Assembly: GCF_006345805.1 (NCBI RefSeq)
Contig: NW_021834864.1
Location: forward strand, 1-44,982
DNA length: 44,982 nt
DNA from: Octopus sinensis
Taxonomy: Eukaryota
Reading direction: 5' to 3'
This document shows, one piece after another, positions 1,544-42,431 of the stretch. The notes under the pieces are model-generated. The model was given only the letters and a program-made list of their open reading frames with translations. It was not told the origin of the DNA and made no database searches. How positions within the stretch are numbered: the stretch's first letter is position 1; each line of letters starts with the position of its first letter. The position numbers and the translations under genes were made by a program.

Positions 1544-1662
1544 TTTTAATCGACCCTGGATTGATGAAAGGCAGCGTTGATCTCAGCGGGATTTGAACTC
1601 GAACGTTAAGAGCGGAAGAAATACAGTCCGGCATTTCATCCAATGTTTTTACGATTCTGCCA
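1544..1662 (-). mobile_element. SINE family A fragment
   Basis: ATCGACCC..ATGAAAGGCAGCGTTGATCTCAGCGGGATTTGAACTC..ACGATTCTGCCA is the reverse complement of the family A head and centre. Confidence 0.7.
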
Positions 1663-2335: not shown

Positions 2336-2365
2336 AGTGGGTCTCAGAGGTGCGCTTAACTGTGA
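2336..2365 (+). repeat. 30-bp exact dispersed repeat, copy 1
   Basis: AGTGGGTCTCAGAGGTGCGCTTAACTGTGA, identical to 12152-12181, with unrelated flanks. Confidence 0.97.
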
Positions 2366-7162: not shown

Positions 7163-7512
7163 TTTACTTGTTCCAGTCATTAGACTGCGGCCATGCTGGG
7201 GCTCCACATTTTTTTAAAGTCTGGCACTTATTCTATCGTTTCTTTTTGCCGAGCCGCTAGGTTATGGCTGGTTGTCAAGCGGTGATGAGGGGACAAACAC
7301 AGACACAAAAGACACAGTTATGTATATATATATATACATATATATATATATACGACGGGCTTCTCTCAGTTTCCGTCTCCCAAATCCACTCATAAGTCTC
7401 TGATCGGCTCGAGGCTGTAGTTGAAGACATTTGCCGAAGGTGCCACGCAGTAGGACTGAACCCAGAACCATGCGTTTGGGAAGCAAGCTTCTTCCTGCAC
7501 ATCCACGCCTTC
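7163..7512 (-). mobile_element. SINE family B, near full length with internal deletions
   Basis: Reverse complement aligns to 42270-42744 across head, central domain, TA tract and tail. Confidence 0.85.
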
Positions 7513-8164: not shown

Positions 8165-8365
8165 TCAAAATAAGCAACAGGATATCAAGAAGTGATGCAG
8201 TACGACGAACCGTTTCAAGCGTCTCCATTTAACTGAACAATCATTATATCAATTTAAATTTGATGTGTAAATTGAATTGATGTAATGATTGCATTGTTCA
8301 ATTAAATGGAGCCGCTTGAAACAGTAGTACTGCATCACTTTTGGATATCCTGTTGCTTATTTTGA
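8165..8365. repeat. Fold-back palindrome of about 200 bp
   Basis: The terminal 22 bp TCAAAATAAGCAACAGGATATC are perfectly inverted, and matching blocks continue to a short loop near 8262-8268. Confidence 0.93.
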
Positions 8366-8776
8366 TTTTATTCACCTTATTTTGAAGTTGTACGGATTAT
8401 ACCGCACTAATTTTTGGTGCTTCACCTGAATCTCAGTTATTTTGCTCTCTCTCTTTCTGTATATATATATATACATACATACGCGCGCCCTCACACACAT
8501 ATACATGCGTCGTTTATGTGTGTGCATGTTTATTTCGTTTAATATTGCTGGATAGGTTGCTGCGTGACACATTTCAAGAGTATGGTGAGAAGTGTGAGGT
8601 GGGATGCGAGACATCTTCAAAGCAGAGGCCGGAACAAGTCCTTTTAAAAGAGTGAATTCTCTTAAAGGCACATACAATGACAGGTGTTGCTTTTAAACCG
8701 TATGAAGAATAAAGTCTAGCAACCAAGTAGGCAGTGGCGTCATTCGAACTCAGAACGCAAAGCGGGTCTCAAGTAT

Positions 8777-9404: not shown

Positions 9405-9499
9405 CATACCACCGACACCATTGGAAGACCCGTAATACCTCGTGTAATCTCATACCACCGACACCATTGGAAGACCCGTAATACCTCGTGTAATCTCAT
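9405..9499 (+). repeat. Perfect 46-bp tandem duplication
   Basis: CATACCACCGACACCATTGGAAGACCCGTAATACCTCGTGTAATCT x2, plus CAT. Confidence 0.97.
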
Positions 9500-11859: not shown

Positions 11860-12600
11860 ATAGAATCCACAAAGATTAGGTTCACATTGAGAAAAAAGAA
11901 AGCAGAAAAAACAAAAGATATGAAGGACTTCCGCAAGCTCCCTAAACGAAGAAGAAGGCCATGTAGCGTTAGGCCCGGGTAGCACCTGTCAAAAGCCCAG
12001 ATATTTTGTAACACTCAAGGCATCTCCGTTTCATCCCCTTTAGAAGCGTATTACCCACTCTCGATCTATTCAGCTTTTACCGTTCTTAACCACAATTCGT
12101 GGAACATAACAAGAGGCATCACCCTTCTCTCTACTATCACTTTGGTCTTCAAGTGGGTCTCAGAGGTGCGCTTAACTGTGATATTTGAAGAATTTCATGA
12201 GGGTGTGGTCAAAGAGGAAAATACCTGTCTTCAAACTTAACAGACGAACCCACTGCACAAATTCTTTTGCCATAGCCGTCTAACCGACATCGAATAGCCA
12301 CCTTCCCTTGCCAAAGGAAAATGGCGCATCAATCTTCACTCAAGACTCAACAGACACCTGAATTCGTCTCATACTTGACAGCAGATGTCTGGCAGAAGAC
12401 TGATGTACGGACATTGGTCGATAACGTGTAGGGAAGTTTCTTCGCCCTGTGCACATCTGTTGGCAAATCCATACCTGCAGACTTAATTTCAAATAAATGT
12501 CATCTACGTGTAGTATTTCCACGCCAAGGACTTTTGGAAGTTGTCAATAGCCTCCAATCTAAAAAAAAATACCCCGCCAAAAATCGATCGCTTTGACTTT
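11860..12600 (-). mobile_element. Decayed L1/Tx1-like non-LTR retrotransposon, ORF2 C-terminus and 3' UTR
   Basis: Minus strand reads NFQKSLAWKYY..(stops)..RCAQGEETSLHVIDQCP (12458-12408), a C-x-x-x-x-E-T-x-x-H-x-x-x-x-C zinc knuckle as in L1/Tx1 ORF2. It continues MAKEFVQWVRL..LMKFFKYH / LKTKVIVERRVM, with multiple stops. Clade call is from motif recall. Confidence 0.7.
12152..12181 (+). repeat. 30-bp exact dispersed repeat, copy 2, inside the Tx1-like LINE relic
   Basis: Identical to 2336-2365. Confidence 0.97.
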
Positions 12601-17960: not shown

Positions 17961-18552
17961 CTGTGTGTGTACACACACACACGCACACATATATGAAATA
18001 GAGGAATAGATACTTGCGGACACACATTTAAAAAGGGGCTGGAATAGTTAGACATAAATAAATCTCTTACTAATAGTGGTGGTGGTGGTGGTGGTGGTGG
18101 TAGTGGTGGTAGTGGTGGTAGTAGTAGTAGTAGTAGTAGGAGTAGTAGTAGTAGTAGTAGTAGTAGTAAACTTTTGACAAGCGAATAACCTTCGCTGCTC
18201 GTTTCAGTAAGAACCCTTCCATGTTTTGTGAATTTTCATATAATCATTGCTGGAAAGTATTTTATTGTTATGGTTTAATCTGTTATTTCGTCTCTCAACG
18301 TTTCTTCGATAAATCAGTGAAAATCTGTAGAGAGAGCAGCGGTGATGCGAAGCCCTTGATGATGGGGGATAGGGAGTTGTTGAACTCTGGAAGGCAAAGT
18401 GTGGGAGAAAAAAACGGGATGAAATTTTGCAAACTCATCAAGAATTTTCAACGCTTCCGCTTCAATACCACCACCACCACCACCACCACCAGCATCTCCA
18501 CTACCCTACAATCTTAAAAAATATAAAGAAAAAAGGATCAATTGAAAGTTCT

Positions 18553-18815
18553 GTTGTGTCTGGGGAGAGTCATTCTCTTTTGGTGCCTTATAATTTGACA
18601 CACCGGTAAAATTTCCACTTATTACTTTTTTATTTTTCTAAAATTTTCGTTGCGTCTTGCAACCTTGTCAATAGTTTTGAAAGTCAAAGCTATTGAAAAG
18701 GCTGCAAGGCGCAACGAAAAGTTTAGAAAAATAAAAAAGAAATAAGTGGAAATTTTACCGGTGAGTGAGTTAAATTATAAGGCACCAAAAGAGAATGACT
18801 CTCCCTAGACACAAC
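18553..18815. repeat. Fold-back palindrome, arms of 128 and 132 bp, 3-nt loop
   Basis: 18553-18680 is the reverse complement of 18684-18815, with about 9 substitutions and one 4-nt indel by manual alignment. Confidence 0.95.
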
Positions 18816-20230
18816 TGAATATGCTTCAACACTCGAACACACACGAAGAATCTTACAAACCAAATCCAAAAACGAAATTAAATGAAAAATTAAGAGAAAA
18901 GACATTATCTCTGATGATATTCTGATTGTCATAATATGTGTTCGGTTGTTACGCCTTCACCAGCGTTAAGTAGAGAGAGAGAGTAATCAATGGACATATT
19001 TAAGATAATGAGTCAAGTCTGAGTGTTACGCCTTTCAGAAAATTTAACCATGGATCGAAACCAAAGACTCGATACGGCTTTAGCATTTCGAAACTTTGTT
19101 ATACACACAACCCAACAGAAATAGGGTCTCGTTAGTTATAATAGATATTTGGGGAGTTTATTAACTGACGAAACCATTTGAAAATGAGTTAACAATGTGA
19201 CGGAGAGGAATGTATTTGAATATGTTTATTTTTGGTCGGAACCAACTCCAGCATCCCTGGATGGGACAAATATGCAAGCGGAAAGTATATAATTCAGTAC
19301 TGTCTGACCAGTGTCCGGTGATTGGTTATAAAACCTGACCCCTGTTGGGATTACCCCGAGTGGAGTGTGTAGAAGTCTTACAAGTTAAAAACAAACAACA
19401 TAGAACCTATCAAAATTGGATGAGTGGCTTGAGGGCCAATGCTGGCCATTCGTAATCTGGTGAGATGAACATCACCTGAGTTACCAAACCCAAGAGATAC
19501 TTTAAAGGAAGTTACGCCAATAATTAATTCTACATTGGACCAATAAAATATATATAATGAAAACCGGATGTGAAGAAAAGTTGGAAAATATTGCTTAAAG
19601 AAAAATGGACTTGTGTCCCAAAGGCAAGAATATTATGAGAAAATGGAAGCGGAATTATTTCAAAATTTGGAATAATTCAGATGAAAAATGAATAATCTAA
19701 AACGTCATCAGATTTGTAGAATTTAGCGTTTTGAGGATTACCTTTAGTCCAAAACTGAGTAGAAGACTTAAGAACGAAGAATAAAATCCGAAATGCTGGA
19801 TTAAATTAGCCAAACGGCAATTGAAATTATGCAAGTCGCCGATGTACAATTTTTACCGTGTCTTGGAATTAATAGAGTCATTTAAAATTCAACAATTTCT
19901 GGGTCTTAATTCGTCTTAATTCCATTTAAATCTTCTTAAATCGTCTTCAGTCTTACGTATATAGCCTAAAATTTTCTTAGAATTTCAATCGGGAATTACA
20001 AATCAGAACAATAATCTCAAAATACACTCACGAGGAATCGATTTTGATGTATATACGTGTAGCCTATATGTGTGTGTATACGTGTGTGTACAAGTGTGCA
20101 TGTAGGTATATATATATATATATATATTGTGTGTATGTGTCTATATATAAATGCTTGCATGTGTGAGTCTATATGTATATGTGTGTGTGTGTGTCTATAC
20201 TATATACATATTTGTATCTATAAATATATA

Positions 20231-23480: not shown

Positions 23481-23612
23481 TAAGTCGATTACACAGACCC
23501 CAGTTTCTAACTGGTACCTTATTTTATCGATCCCGAAATGATGAAAGGCAAAGACGATCACGGTGGAAACTGAACTCCGAACGAAATGCCATTGAGCATT
23601 TTATCCAATGTA
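23481..23612 (-). mobile_element. SINE family A fragment
   Basis: TAAGTCGATTAC..CCCCAG..AACTGGTAC..ATCGATCCCGAAATGATGAAAGGCAAAG..TGAACTC. Confidence 0.75.
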
Positions 23613-29459: not shown

Positions 29460-30121
29460 AATAAGTAGTACAGACATTAGGAATGGCAAAATACAAGATA
29501 GAAAAGACAGGTGCGGCAATTTTTCTACTAACATCAAAGATAGATGCAATCAGAATACGGTAAATGGGAAGCCGAAATCGAAAGAATTGAGTCAGATGGA
29601 AGGAGGTCAGTTGAGAAAACGTCGACATCAAAAAATATTAATAATGAAGCCAAAAAAAAGAAGAAAGAAAAATTATTGAAATGTTATGCAAGGTCTGCTA
29701 TATGTTGGAATTATTGGTATGTGGAACCGAAATAAGAACATTAACCAAACTATTATCAATTATGGAATCTGTTAGAAAAGCTTTGCGGTGGAGAGTTTTA
29801 GAATACTTTTGAGAATATCATGGACAGAAATGAAAACCAATGATGAACAACTAAGAATGGTAAAAATTAAGAAACTTTTATTTGAGATCATCAAAGAGAG
29901 AAAATTGAAATATTGTGGACACTTAATTAGGGAAAAATAGCTTAATGGGTCTGTTAAAGGAAAAATAAAATGAATAGGAGATGGGGACCGAGAATTAGGT
30001 GAATGGATAATGTGAAGAATTGGACAGACTTTAAAAAATGAAATGAATGTACAAGAATGGAACCAGAAATATCAAGGTTGCTATTCGTGGTATTGAACCA
30101 ATCGAGAGCAGATGCTAACCT
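29460..30121 (+). mobile_element. Decayed RTE-clade LINE 3' end followed by a (GAT)n tail
   Basis: Fragments read KLLKCYA..CGTEIRTLTK, then RILLRISWTEMKTNDEQLRMVKIKKLLFEIIKERKLKYCGHLIR (29800-29931), then RRWGPRIR*MDNVKNWT. These resemble the RTE post-RT region (RRILRISW..TNEEV..LKYFGH..RGRP..RWMD). (GAT)n runs 30122-30222. Confidence 0.82.
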
Positions 30122-30478: not shown

Positions 30479-32091
30479 TTGAATTCGTTAAAAGTCTGAT
30501 CAACGATGTCTAGTTTGACGCATGCGTATATTTGACCAGCACTGATTAGACAGCTTATTTTCACAAAGATTAAATTCACACCACAGTCTCGCACTCAAAG
30601 AAAATAATAAAAAAAGAACAAGAAATATATAACCCCCCCCCCCCAATAAAAAACAAAATAAGCAATAAAAACAACTACATAAAGTTATTCCAAAAGCAGA
30701 AAAAAAGAAGATAAAATTAATACGATTTATCAAACCCTGAACGGATTAAACTAATATAAATTTCAACATGATTTCAAAATCTGTTGAACAGCTCTCATCA
30801 CTATTATTCCAGCATTCAACGACCCCACCACACACACACACCGTCCATTTATTAAGCAAATATATTCGCCATGATTACGTAACAGAATCGAAGAAGGGGG
30901 AGAAACAGGTGGTTGATATACTCCGATTCTTAACCATTATTGCAAGCTTTCGTCCTTTTTGCCTTCTTTTGTTTCTGCGTTTTATCTCCCTTCTTTTTAT
31001 AATGAATTATAATTGAGATAACTAATTAAAGGGGGTTTTTTGTACTTGGTATTTTGAAAATATTTTTTTTTTATTTGACAGAAGACGAAGACTGATTGGT
31101 CGAAGCATAAAAACGGCTTACCTCAGTCTCTTCTTCTTCTTTCTTTACTTCGCTATTATCTCCTCCTTTTCCCCCTTCTTCACTTTGTTAGTATCTCCTC
31201 CTCCTCCTCTTTCACCTCCTCCCTTCTCTTTCTCAGTGTCATCGTTATCGTCGCCGAAATCATTGCTGTTTACGTGAGACTACATCTATCCCTAACCACT
31301 TGGACGCTGAATATTTCCCCTGTTCCTTTCTATTTATGCCCACTCTCTCTCACTCTCTCAGTTACACACTCTCTCAGTCGTTCTCTCTCTGTCTCTCTCA
31401 GTCGTTTTCTTTCTCTCTCTCTCTCTGTCATTCTCTCTCTCACTATTCTTTCGGTCTCCCTGGGGTGTCTGACGTGAATTGCAATGTTTCGGTGTAATCT
31501 TAACACACGCCCAAATGCACACAAACCCATCACCTACACACTCAACCACATGTACACACACATACGCACACACACGCACACTTTTATTTGCCTGCATACA
31601 TGCACACACAATATGCGTGACTGTACAGACAAACATATAGACATACATACGCAGATATGTACATGATTCTACTCCTAGCCACCCTTACATAAAACTCCAC
31701 TCCCCATCCTCGTCGATGAGAGCCTATTACAGATACTCCAGTCTTTCGATACACTTTAGCACCACTCTCAGACAGGGTGCAATCCAAAATTACGAAGAAT
31801 ATTTTCTCTGTATAAAAGACGTCATCGAGTCATTCCGAAGCGAAGTATCTTAGATTCAAAACGTGTCACAAAAACCGAAGAATGGGGATTAAAATCATTC
31901 TGAAGAAAGGAAATGTTGCTAGTCTATAAAAACCAAATGAAATTACTTGACTTTCTCATCCAAAGTGCTTTCGATATATCTATTGGAAGTTGCACAGTCT
32001 AAATAAGTAACTTCTTGGGAATAGGAAGGGTTTCCACGTGTGCGCGGGCGTGTATATTGTCAGGTGGAGTGTAAAGTTGGGGTATTTTCAG

Positions 32092-32160
32092 AGAAGCAGT
32101 CGACCTGAATATTTAGCTATCAATACTGCCGGGTTCCAAGCCAAAGCCGGAAATCCTCAG
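32092..32160 (+). CDS. Possible upstream 69-nt phase 0-0 exon (RSSRPEYLAINTAGFQAKAGNPQ), product unknown
   Basis: Acceptor gtattttcag| and donor CAG|gtgatg. Only one frame is open, and its end phase fits the 37988 exon. No recognisable motif. Confidence 0.25.
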
Positions 32161-32530
32161 GTGATGAAAATCCAAGTCTCACGACAATTACACCGTAAAG
32201 AAAGTTTGGCGAAGAGTAAAGAATCTAAACGACAGGACAAAGAAAATTCTTTAACACATCTTTAATGATTCTTTACAACTGTTTCTGCCCCATCTCTATT
32301 GGCAACGGCAGTTTACACAAAAATTTACGTAATGTTTGTGGTTTTTTGACGTTAGGGAGGCCGTTCAAATTTCTATCAAAGGTCTGCTGTCACACGATGC
32401 GTCTTTCAGATCTAGTATTTTGGTTTATATCGAGTGTGTATATATAATATAATCAGGTAGAAAGTATTTTAGTAGGGAAACACACGTGATGGATATATAA
32501 AGAAAGAGAAACGACGAAAAAATGCACACT

Positions 32531-32854
32531 ATTTGTTTTACAGGATTTAATAGTATATTATTGCCATGATAATAAAGATTATACAATTTTGTATAAAATA
32601 AGGTTTTGTTCTTTCAACATAATTGAAGTAAGGACCGGTTTCGCATTGCTCATCAAGCTGAGAGTTGAAAAGGATATATTGCTAGGGGGGGGGGGCCTCT
32701 AGAAATTTATCTTTTTCAACTTTCAGTCTGACTAGCAATGCGAAACTGTTCATTTCTGCAATTATATTGAAAGAACAAAACCTTATTTTATACAAAATTG
32801 TATAATATCTTTATTATCATGGCTCTAATAGACTCTTAAATCTTGTAAACAAAT
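32531..32854. repeat. Fold-back palindrome of about 324 bp with a G-run loop
   Basis: Arms include a perfect block of about 38 bp, TATACAATTTTGTATAAAATAAGGTTTTGTTCTTTCAA, plus TTTCGCATTGCT / AGCAATGCGAAA. Confidence 0.93.
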
Positions 32855-32868
32855 CTGTTTTTTCATTT

Positions 32869-32904
<36 letters not shown>

Positions 32905-32946
32905 GTATATATATACATACATATATATATATATATATTAATATAT

Positions 32947-33000
<54 letters not shown>

Positions 33001-33001
<1 letters not shown>

Positions 33002-33078
33002 GGAAAGTTTACGAGAATAAACAAAAGACGAAGGCAGTCGGTGTACAAACAAACAGATGTATTAGTACAGCGCTCAGA
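33001..33078 (-). mobile_element. Fragment of a short dispersed repeat (possibly Penelope-associated)
   Basis: Reverse complement aligns to 41039-41105 (TAATACA.CTG.TTGTT..CCTTCGT..GTAAA). It is truncated where the 92-bp duplicated segment begins. Confidence 0.5.
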
Positions 33079-33527
33079 ATTAAAATCATTCTGAAGAAAG
33101 GAAAGGTTGCTAGTCTATAAAAACCAAATGAAATTACTTGACTTTCTCATCCAAAGTGCTTTCGATATATATTTATATATATATGGGAGGGAGAGATATA
33201 TAGATAGGTAATGTGCTCATATAAATACACAACCTGATATCTGAGTATTCACTCATTCAGTCACCTTTGTATAGACATGCACGCATATTTCACGATGATG
33301 TATTCGGGAGAAACAAAATAGGATGGAATCGAAATAACCCCCCCTCTTTCTCATTCACACATTCACACAGGCAGATATATGATCTATTCATTAAGTAGTT
33401 AAAACAAAAACGTTCTCATAAAATTTCCGATTGTAATAAAAACATACTCTAGAAACCTATTGGAGTATAATAGAAAAAGAAAACGAATTATATTCACTGA
33501 TCTCATTGAAATTTGCATTAATTCTGT

Positions 33528-36748: not shown

Positions 36749-36752
<4 letters not shown>

Positions 36753-36970
36753 GAAGCGTTAGCGCGCTGGGCGAAATGCTTAGCGGTATTTCGTCTGTCG
36801 TTACGTTCTGAGTTCAAATTCTGCCGAGGTCGACTTTGCCTTTCATCCTTTCGGGGTCGATAAATTAAGTACCAGTTACGCACTGGGGTTGATGTAATCA
36901 ACTTAATTCCTTTGTCTGTATTTGTTTGTCCCCTCTATGTTTAGCCCCTTGAGGGCAGTAAAGAAAAAAA
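36749..36970 (+). mobile_element. Near full-length tRNA-derived SINE (family A)
   Basis: GGCAGAAGCGTTAGC..GAGTTCAAATTC (B box), central GCCTTTCATCCTTTCGGGGTCGATAAATTAAGTACC, tail GCCCCTTGAGGGCAGTAAAGAAA. Several homologues occur in this window. Confidence 0.88.
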
Positions 36971-37125: not shown

Positions 37126-37255
37126 GAGTGGCAGAATCGTTAGCACGCTGGATGAAATGTTCAGCGGCATTTCGCTAGTCTTTGCGTTCTGAGTTCAAAT
37201 TCTGCCGAGGTCGACTTTGACTTTCATCCTTTCGGGGTCGATGAATTTAGCACCA
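37126..37255 (+). mobile_element. SINE family A, 3'-truncated
   Basis: Aligns to 36749-36870 and runs into the (ATT)n tract. Confidence 0.85.
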
Positions 37256-37286
37256 GAAAGGATTATTATTATTGTTATTATTATCA

Positions 37287-40710: not shown

Positions 40711-40856
40711 GGTGCAGCTAAGCTTGCTTCTCATCCACATGGTTCCGGGTTCAGTCGCACTGCGTGGCACCTTGTACAAGTGCCTTCTACTACAGCCTCG
40801 GGCCGACCAAAGCCTTATGAGTGGATTGGGTAGAGGGAAACTGGAAGAAGCCTGTC

Positions 40857-40862
<6 letters not shown>
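40711..40862 (+). mobile_element. SINE family B, 5' half
   Basis: CCACATGGTTCCGGGTTCAGTCGCACTGCGTGGCACCTTG..GGGCCGACCAAAGCCTT matches the 42270 copy and ends in a TA tract. Confidence 0.85.
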
Positions 40863-42269: not shown

Positions 42270-42431
42270 CAGGAGTGGCTGTGTGGTAAGTAGCTTGCTT
42301 ATCAACCACATGGTCCCGAGTTGAGTCCCACTGCGTCGCACCTTGGGCAAGTTTCTTGTACTATAGCTTCGGGCCGACCAAAGCCTTGTGAGTGGTTTTG
42401 GTAGACGGAAACTGAAAGAAGCTCGTCGTAT

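What the first reader, a model, noticed from the sequence alone, without database searches (positions are those of the whole stretch)
12152..12181. 22-bp cassette with GTG duplication at two AGTGA sites 9.8 kb apart, one copy breaking a LINE reading frame
Seen: the identical 30-mer A-GTG-[GGTCTCAGAGGTGCGCTTAACT]-GTG-A occurs at 2336-2365 and 12152-12181 with unrelated flanks. At the second site the minus-strand LINE frame reads FFKYH then S*AHL*. Deleting 12153-12177 (22 bp plus one GTG) gives an uninterrupted FFKYH-LKTKVIVERRVM, so this copy looks like a secondary insertion. Inference, two models: (a) a polymerase-theta-type templated insertion copied from the 2336 locus using 4-nt microhomologies (AGTG / GTGA); (b) a very small mobile or duplicated unit with a 3-bp target duplication and an AGTGA target at both sites, with no TIRs or tRNA head. 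I cannot place it in any family I recognise.
Basis: partly seen in the sequence, partly recalled or inferred. Interest (0 to 1): 0.75.

Follow-up and report, generated by a model that had tools for sequence, protein, structure and literature searches.

The report
Short copied DNA patch at hairpin site
A 25-base stretch identical to sequence 9.8 kb upstream was pasted into a small hairpin-prone spot of non-coding animal DNA, which looks like an ordinary scar of error-prone DNA repair or replication template switching rather than a new kind of mobile element.

Summary
The 30-mer AGTGGGTCTCAGAGGTGCGCTTAACTGTGA occurs exactly twice, at 2336-2365 and 12152-12181, in the same orientation. The flanks are unrelated, and the window holds no diverged or partial copies.

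The new evidence is frame-independent. Removing 12153-12177 recreates two overlapping perfect inverted repeats across the junction (8-bp and 7-bp stems). Only 0.025% of random 25-bp deletions give that result. Neither repeat exists in the filled sequence, and nothing comparable appears at site 1. So site 2 is the recipient, a quasi-palindromic site, and site 1 or an identical sequence elsewhere was the template. The junctions have 4-nt microhomology (AGTG, GTGA), which explains the apparent GTG "target duplication".

The best reading is a single templated insertion. Whether polymerase theta end joining or replicative template switching made it cannot be decided.

The "LINE" argument is weak. 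Pfam, solved structures and protein searches found nothing. Only a post hoc BovB similarity (p about 0.007) exists, and it scores the same with or without the 25 bp.

The micro-transposon model has no support here, but it cannot be excluded without the whole genome, which these tools could not reach. This is a known kind of event and of low interest.

The parts
2336..2365 (+). Template-side copy of the 30-mer (AGTG + 22 nt + GTGA). Presumed donor, or identical to the donor.
   Evidence: Exact match. The reconstructed 'empty' version of this site has no inverted repeat better than a 4-bp stem. The unit's GC content and CpG fit this site's right flank.
12152..12181 (+). Recipient-side copy of the 30-mer.
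   Evidence: Exact match. A gapped extension gives 35/38 over 12147-12184 against 2331-2368, that is CTnCn-AGTG...GTGA-nAT.
12153..12177 (+). The net 25 bp inserted (GTG + 22 nt). It can equally be written 12156-12180, because placement is ambiguous over the repeated GTG.
   Evidence: Removing it restores two perfect inverted repeats across the junction and joins the two minus-strand open frames.
12135..12142 (.). Left arm TATCACTT of inverted repeat 1. Its partner AAGTGATA is 12151-12152 plus 12178-12183, contiguous only in the empty site. Stem 8 bp, loop 8 nt.
   Evidence: Absent from the filled sequence.
12146..12152 (.). Left arm TCTTCAA of inverted repeat 2. Stem 7 bp. In the empty site the loop is GTGATAT.
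12185..12191 (.). Right arm TTGAAGA of inverted repeat 2.
11943..12230 (-). Possible heavily decayed LINE-like (RTE/BovB-like C-terminal) remnant surrounding site 2. Its status is only suggestive.
   Evidence: The frameshift-tolerant alignment to the real BovB protein P0034 scores 47 against a null of 34.5 +/- 4.2. Pfam, the Protein Data Bank, the protein database and RTE protein P0261 all found nothing.

Best explanation
A single, fairly recent templated insertion. The ancestral sequence at site 2 was ...TATCACTTTGGTCTTCAAGTGATATTTGAAGA..., a small quasi-palindrome able to form either of two hairpins.

Inferred steps: a break or a stalled or dislodged nascent strand arose at this structure. 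A 3' end finishing in ...AGTG paired with the complementary AGTG at the 2336 locus, 9,816 bp away on the same strand orientation. Imperfect pairing extended this to 7 of 9 bases. A polymerase copied about 22-26 nt (GGTCTCAGAGGTGCGCTTAACT-GTGA). The extended end then returned to its own locus by pairing through GTGA, 6 of 7 bases counting the next three positions.

Shown: the net result is +25 bp, and GTG appears on both sides because both switch points lie in microhomology.

Not determinable from sequence: whether the enzyme pathway was polymerase-theta end joining of a double-strand break or a replicative template switch (FoSTeS/MMBIR type).

The insert has no function of its own. It lies in non-coding, microsatellite-rich DNA, possibly inside an old LINE-like remnant.
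For: - There are two exact 30-mers in direct orientation, far beyond chance.
- No flank similarity exists on the shared diagonal, so this is not a relic of a larger duplication.
- There are no diverged or partial copies in 45 kb, so this was one event and not a family.
- Perfect 4-nt microhomology lies at both junctions, with imperfect extension to 35/38.
- The empty-site reconstruction gives two distinct perfect inverted repeats spanning the junction. In 20,000 random 25-bp deletions, at least one occurred in 0.79%, a stem of 8 bp or more in 0.15%, and two distinct ones in 0.025%. Both are absent from the filled sequence, and none appears for an empty site 1.
- The insert is not templated from the local flanks at either site.
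- The unit's composition fits the site 1 neighbourhood.
- The minus-strand open frames join when the 25 bp are removed. This carries low weight.
- The size agrees with published templated insertions: generally under 25 bp, occasionally more than 20 consecutive bases (PMC12426944). Germline templated inserts contribute to natural variation (PMC4490562).
Against: - The template distance of 9.8 kb is atypical for polymerase-theta insertions, which use sequence flanking the break.
- No empty-site allele, orthologue or raw read could be examined. Public collections gave no match to the 22-mer or to the filled-or-empty site pattern. Twenty-two window ORFs are absent from the protein and contig collections.
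- I found the inverted repeats after looking for something special at the site, so the p-value is post hoc.
- The true donor could be a third identical locus outside the window.
- The LINE-based argument does not discriminate direction.
Confidence: 0.7

Rival explanations
1. Same mechanism but a different donor. Site 2, and possibly site 1 too, was copied from a third locus or from an abundant repeat or RNA carrying this sequence elsewhere in the genome.
For: The genome outside the 45-kb window could not be searched (searches cover only prokaryotic, metagenomic and viral collections). Nothing proves that site 1 is the original.
Against: A reconstructed empty site 1 shows no insertion signature. 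The unit's GC and CpG content fit the site 1 flank. A donor in cis 9.8 kb away is the simpler explanation than an unseen locus. No Rfam family, tRNA or other repeat in the window contains the unit.
Confidence: 0.1
2. Opposite direction: the 25 bp are native to site 2 (for example, original LINE sequence read as ...ITVKRTSETH-LKTKV...) and were copied into site 1.
For: In the intact sequence, the frame that reads LKTKVIVERRVMPLVMFHELW stays open through the 25 bp. BovB aligns through it as well as it aligns to the deleted version: tblastn gives 19.2 against 18.1 bits, and the frameshift-tolerant score is 47 for both.
Against: The double inverted repeat appears only when the 25 bp are removed from site 2 (p about 2.5e-4). 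Nothing comparable appears at site 1. The LINE identity itself is unproven.
Confidence: 0.05
3. A very small (22-bp) non-autonomous mobile unit that inserts at AGTGA and duplicates GTG.
For: Formally, both copies are flanked by GTG within A-GTG...GTG-A.
Against: The unit has no terminal inverted repeats, no hairpin and no tRNA or RNA-family signal. There are no diverged or partial copies in 45 kb. Site 1 shows no empty-site signature. The flanking GTG is what microhomology at both switch points produces. From my own knowledge, 22 bp is well below the size of any described transposable element.
Confidence: 0.04
4. A conserved functional block kept identical by selection. One example is a duplicated 24-nt micro-exon with its splice sites, AG|TGGGTCTCAGAGGTGCGCTTAACT|GTGA, which is open in two + frames (WVSEVRLT, GLRGALN). 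A regulatory or small-RNA site is another.
For: The identity begins exactly at AG and ends at GTGA. A pyrimidine-rich tract precedes site 2.
Against: 100% nucleotide identity, including synonymous positions, next to fully randomised flanks does not fit an old exon duplication. The donor sites are weak by consensus: ACT|GTGAAA and ACT|GTGATA. The window holds no other detectable coding sequence. There is no RNA structure. This model does not explain the palindrome restored by deletion.
Confidence: 0.04
5. An assembly, polishing or adapter artefact.
For: No raw reads could be checked. The unit contains a GGTCTC (BsaI) site.
Against: The 22-mer is absent from 185,579 prokaryotic genomes, from metagenomes and viral contigs, and from the full text of 8 million papers. 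The two flanks of site 2 belong together, because inverted-repeat arms and open frames continue across the junction. A chimeric join or adapter would not give that. The microhomology at the junctions is a biological signature.
Confidence: 0.05

Closest known systems
Polymerase-theta-mediated end joining (TMEJ/MMEJ) templated insertions
   Same: A small insert (22-25 nt) identical to a template elsewhere, with microhomology at the junctions. These are germline-heritable scars seen in natural variation (PMC4490562; PMC12426944).
   Different: Published templates lie in the sequences immediately flanking the break. Here the template is 9.8 kb away, and the local flanks show no similarity to the insert. 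No accompanying deletion is evident.
Replicative template switching (FoSTeS / MMBIR templated insertions)
   Same: Two switches at 2-5-nt microhomology or 'microhomeology'. The template lies at a distance in cis. The event is associated with a secondary-structure-forming site (PMC8421209 for the insertion signature; the link to palindromes is from my own knowledge).
   Different: These events are usually described at the junctions of copy-number changes or complex rearrangements. The MMB-TI class in PMC8421209 is defined by inverted copies within 100 bp. Here the event is a clean, direct-orientation insertion with no other rearrangement.
'Filler DNA' at non-homologous end-joining junctions in plants and animals (my own knowledge, not checked in the literature tools)
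   Same: A short patch copied from an ectopic genomic site, bounded by a few bases of homology.
   Different: Filler DNA is usually found at deletion or transgene junctions and is often a patchwork of several sources. Here there is one source and no deletion.
Miniature transposable elements with target-site duplications
   Same: A short unit flanked by a 3-bp direct repeat at two unrelated sites.
   Different: The unit has no terminal repeats, no family and no structure. It is an order of magnitude smaller than known elements. The flanking repeat is explained by microhomology.

Membership tests
Templated insertion (generic: DNA-repair or replication copy of an ectopic template) | The inserted bases are identical to a sequence elsewhere that can serve as template | tested here: met
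   30/30 identity with 2336-2365.
Templated insertion (generic) | Microhomology between recipient and template at the switch points | tested here: met
   AGTG on entry and GTGA on exit, extended imperfectly to 7/9 and 6/7.
Templated insertion (generic) | The recipient flanks are contiguous in the ancestral state (an empty site exists) | tested here: inconclusive
   No real empty allele was available. The reconstructed empty site restores two perfect inverted repeats (p about 2.5e-4) and joins two open frames.
Polymerase-theta end joining (TMEJ) | The template lies in the sequence flanking the break (tens to a few hundred bp) | tested here: not met
   The template is 9,816 bp away. The insert has no similarity to +/-100, 300 or 1000 bp of local flank beyond shuffles. 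The criterion comes from PMC12426944 and PMC4490562.
Polymerase-theta end joining (TMEJ) | Small insert size (generally <25 bp, occasionally >20 consecutive bases) | tested here: met
   The copied tract is 22-25 nt.
Polymerase-theta end joining (TMEJ) | Dependence on Pol theta | not testable with these tools
   This needs genetics.
FoSTeS / MMBIR template switch | Switches at 2-5 nt of microhomology to a template at a distance in cis | tested here: met
   4 + 4 nt of microhomology, 9.8 kb away, same orientation.
FoSTeS / MMBIR template switch | Association with a larger copy-number change or complex rearrangement | tested here: not met
   The event is a simple 25-bp insertion, and there is no other similarity on the diagonal.
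Transposable element with target-site duplication | Defined termini (inverted or long terminal repeats, poly-A, hairpin, tRNA head) | tested here: not met
   No inverted termini are present. The folds are no better than shuffles. No tRNA or Rfam match was found.
Transposable element with target-site duplication | A multi-copy family with diverged members | tested here: inconclusive
   None in 45 kb, with 0 hits at 1-6 mismatches. The rest of the genome could not be searched.
LINE (RTE/BovB-type) remnant around site 2 | A recognisable reverse-transcriptase domain | tested here: not met
   Pfam found no hit in any of the three minus frames of 11.5-13.0 kb, even at E<=10. The Protein Data Bank search found none.
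LINE (RTE/BovB-type) remnant around site 2 | Significant similarity to real RTE-clade ORF2 proteins | tested here: inconclusive
   BovB P0034 scores 47 against a null of 34.5 +/- 4.2 (p about 0.007, reference chosen post hoc). RTE P0261 scores 33 against a null of 36.4 (p = 0.77).

The most novel reading that the evidence does not exclude
The 22-nt unit is a real micro-mobile sequence. It could be an ultra-small element that targets AGTGA and duplicates GTG. Or it could be a small-RNA-sized (22-nt) RNA copied back into DNA at breaks. In either case many more copies with the same flank pattern would exist elsewhere in this genome.
Probability: 0.04. Interest if true: 0.8.

Novelty: new member of a known kind. 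Interest (0 to 1): 0.25.

Why it matters
If the reading is right, this is a clean natural example of a templated insertion. Three features can all be read from the sequence: the template lies kilobases away in cis, microhomology is visible at both switch points, and the recipient was a small double hairpin. Most catalogues of such events search for templates only within about 100 bp (PMC8421209), so cases like this one are missed. A genome-wide screen for isolated exact repeats of 20-40 bp with microhomologous borders could measure how often distant-template events occur in this microsatellite-rich animal genome. On its own, the event has no functional consequence. It shows nothing new about mechanism.

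Tried and rejected
- Other copies of the surrounding repeat in the window, to use as an internal empty-site reference: none found.
- Pfam on stitched and three-frame translations: nothing.
- Protein database search with the stitched peptide: nothing.
- Solved structures: nothing.
I ran it with the real BovB protein P0034, and it returned almost only BovB fragments plus one full-length RTE, P0261.
- The last protein search used the clearer RTE remnant at 29.8 kb, to fetch host-lineage LINE proteins: nothing.
- Exact look-ups of 22 window ORFs in public contig and protein collections: none on record.
- The 22-mer in prokaryotic genomes, metagenomes, viral contigs and paper full text: no match.
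- A pattern matching site 2 whether filled or empty, in metagenomes: no match.
- Local templating or slippage from the flanks: rejected.
- Relic of a larger duplication: rejected.
- miRNA-like or other structured RNA: rejected. Folds are no better than shuffles. The weak Rfam hits lie on the neighbouring microsatellite, far below threshold, and do not overlap the 30-mer.
- tRNA-derived head: none.
- My own initial reading of 'LHVDDIYL' as the RT YxDD box was not supported by any alignment, and I dropped it.
- The SINE-like sequence was searched in the literature to test the 'octopus' origin: no match. The host lineage remains unverified.

Full report
**1. The observation**

The window reads ...GCTGCG-AGTGGGTCTCAGAGGTGCGCTTAACTGTGA-AATACA... 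at 2336-2365 and ...TCTTCA-AGTGGGTCTCAGAGGTGCGCTTAACTGTGA-TATTTG... at 12152-12181. Both copies are on the + strand.

- The 22-nt core has exactly two matches even when 3 mismatches are allowed, and no shuffle produced two.
- A Hamming scan finds no copy with 1-6 mismatches on either strand. No sub-word of the unit of 10 nt or more occurs anywhere else.
- Among all exact repeats of 16 bp or more outside low-complexity sequence, this pair is the only one that is not part of a longer diverged repeat.
- Identity on the shared diagonal (+9816) in the 200-1000 bp on either side is 0.24-0.29, the same as on unrelated diagonals (0.26). So the pair is not the remnant of a larger duplication.
- Just outside the exact block there are extra partial matches (CTnCn before, nAT after), giving 35/38.
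Deleting 12153-12177 joins FFKYH to LKTKVIVERRVM.

**2. Is the surrounding sequence a LINE, and does the frame argument work?**

This part of the finding is weaker than stated.

- Pfam finds no reverse-transcriptase domain in the stitched peptide or in any of the three minus frames of 11.5-13.0 kb, even at E<=10.
- The Protein Data Bank search and the word-indexed protein search find nothing.
- From memory, the motif order resembled the RTE/BovB clade. I used a remembered BovB stretch only as bait and retrieved real ruminant BovB proteins. Through the exhaustive search I also retrieved one distinct full-length RTE protein, P0261.
- Plain tblastn of these real proteins against the region is not significant (E 0.04-0.8 in a 3-kb search space).
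- I then wrote a frameshift-tolerant protein-to-DNA aligner. BovB P0034 gives a colinear alignment of about 85-90 residues (LKTKV-IVERRVMPLVMFH-ELW ... KLNRSRVGNTLLKGMKR ... PGLTLHGLLLRL). It scores 47 against a dinucleotide-shuffle null of 34.5 +/- 4.2, and 2 of 300 shuffles reach it.
- That reference was chosen post hoc. The independent RTE P0261 scores 33 against a null of 36.4 (p = 0.77).

So "decayed LINE-like remnant" is suggestive only. More importantly, the alignment scores 47 both with and without the 25 bp. In the intact sequence it simply reads through the insert in the other frame (VKRTSETH-LKTKV). A restored frame would also occur for any 3n+1 indel. The frame argument therefore cannot tell which copy is the insertion.

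**3. Evidence that does identify the recipient**

With 12153-12177 removed, site 2 reads TATCACTT-TGGTCTTC-AAGTGATA and, overlapping it, TCTTCAA-GTGATAT-TTGAAGA. These are two distinct perfect inverted repeats, with 8-bp and 7-bp stems, and both span the junction.

- Neither repeat exists in the filled sequence.
- In 20,000 random 25-bp deletions at non-microsatellite positions of the same window, 0.79% gave a junction spanned by at least one inverted repeat with a stem of 7 bp or more and a loop of 3-10 nt. A stem of 8 bp or more appeared in 0.15%, and two distinct repeats in 0.025%.
- The same reconstruction at site 1 gives nothing better than a 4-bp stem.

I found this after looking for something special, so the probability is post hoc. 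It is still small enough to carry the argument. The two flanks of site 2 belonged together as a quasi-palindrome, and the 25 bp interrupt it.

The unit's composition (56% GC, one CpG) also fits the GC- and CpG-rich right flank of site 1 better than the AT-rich, CpG-poor immediate flanks of site 2. This is weak support.

**4. What the unit is not**

- It has no similarity to its own flanks at either site beyond shuffles, so local slippage or snap-back synthesis is out.
- It does not fold, alone or in context, as DNA or RNA, better than shuffled sequence.
- No tRNA and no Rfam family covers it. The weak miRNA-model hits near site 1 sit on the adjacent (CA)n/(TA)n repeat, far below threshold, and do not overlap the 30-mer.
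- It is absent from 185,579 prokaryotic genomes, the metagenome and viral collections, and the searchable literature. That argues against a contaminant, vector or published adapter.

**5. Mechanism**

Shown:
- There are two identical tracts in direct orientation, 9,816 bp apart.
- Perfect 4-nt microhomology lies at both borders: AGTG on entry and GTGA on exit.
- The recipient site can form hairpins.
- There is no other rearrangement.

Inferred: a break or a dislodged nascent 3' end at the hairpin-prone site paired through AGTG with the upstream locus, was extended by about 22-26 nt, and returned through GTGA. The GTG on both sides is then not a target-site duplication made by a staggered cut. 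It is the overlap of the two microhomologies in an original AGTGA.

The size fits published templated insertions, which are generally under 25 bp and occasionally exceed 20 consecutive bases (PMC12426944). Such inserts are known to enter the germline and contribute to natural variation (PMC4490562).

The distance does not fit the usual polymerase-theta picture, in which the template is the sequence flanking the break. The MMBIR-type insertions catalogued in PMC8421209 are also defined by templates within 100 bp, and its authors note that more distant templates are not searched for. A replicative template switch of the FoSTeS/MMBIR type accommodates the distance and the structure-prone site, but it is normally described at larger rearrangements.

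I therefore commit to [quoted passage not shown] at a confidence of about 0.7. I leave the polymerase pathway open.

**6. Rivals**

- A third, unseen donor locus (about 0.10).
- The opposite direction (about 0.05).
- A 22-bp mobile unit (about 0.04).
- A conserved micro-exon or regulatory block, since the identity runs exactly AG|24 nt|GTGA (about 0.04).
- An artefact (about 0.05).

Each is set out with its tests in the structured fields. None explains the restored double inverted repeat as well as insertion at site 2 does.

**7. Limits**

No sequence from this genome outside the window, from relatives, or from reads could be reached.

- Twenty-two window ORFs are absent from the contig and protein collections.
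- A pattern matching site 2 whether filled or empty has no metagenome match.
- The host-lineage LINE search from the better RTE remnant at 29.8 kb returned nothing.

I recognise the SINE-like repeat only from memory, and no tool verified the origin.

**8. Verdict**

The sequence observation is real. The LINE claim is unproven, and model (b) is unsupported. This is an instance of a known mutational process, with an unusually distant template and a legible hairpin context. Interest is low.

Noticed in passing
window 29700-30090 (+): A decayed RTE-type LINE C-terminus (…GLLYVG…RILLRISWTEMKTNDEQL…KLKYCGHLIR…). The real RTE protein P0261 matches 29779-29931 at E = 0.002, 35% identity. This LINE remnant is better supported than the one around site 2.
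   Followed up: partly
window 1546-1662 (-), 23481-23586 (-), 36749-36875 (+), 37130-37256 (+), fragment near 8746 (-): Several copies of a SINE-like repeat about 130-190 bp long (…TGGCAGAATCGTTAGCACGCTGG…GAGTTCAAATTCCGCCGAGGTCGACTTTGCCTTTCATCCTTTCGGGGTCGAT…). Copies are 72-87% identical. ARAGORN calls no tRNA, and the literature search found no match. From memory it resembles cephalopod SINEs, but this is unverified.
   Followed up: partly
window 18549-18819: A near-perfect 271-bp palindrome. Its arms are about 135 bp, 92-93% complementary, with a 3-nt spacer. It looks like a foldback or MITE-like element.
   Followed up: partly
window 31888-33170: Two 92-bp direct repeats (31888-31979 and 33079-33170) are 99% identical and 1191 bp apart. 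They bracket a palindrome of about 310 bp (arms 32578-32688 / 32696-32806, 86% complementary) and a long (TA)n tract. This could be a recent local duplication or an element with terminal direct repeats.
   Followed up: partly
window 7353-7510 (+), 40720-40858 (-/+), 42271-42429 (-/+): Another dispersed repeat family of about 140-160 bp, 80-85% identical, present in three places and in both orientations.
   Followed up: no
window 9405-9499: A perfect tandem duplication of a 46-bp unit: 2.1 copies, 100% identical. It looks recent.
   Followed up: no
window 8165-8186 and 8344-8365: A perfect 22-bp inverted repeat (TCAAAATAAGCAACAGGATATC), with arms 157 bp apart, directly next to an (AT)n tract. 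These could be the termini of a miniature inverted-repeat element.
   Followed up: no
whole window: Microsatellite density is extreme: 124 Tandem Repeats Finder rows in 45 kb, mostly (CA)n, (TA)n, (TATC)n, (TGTA)n and trinucleotide runs. GC is 37%. No ORF has a convincing coding character, and no Rfam family reaches its gathering score.
   Followed up: partly
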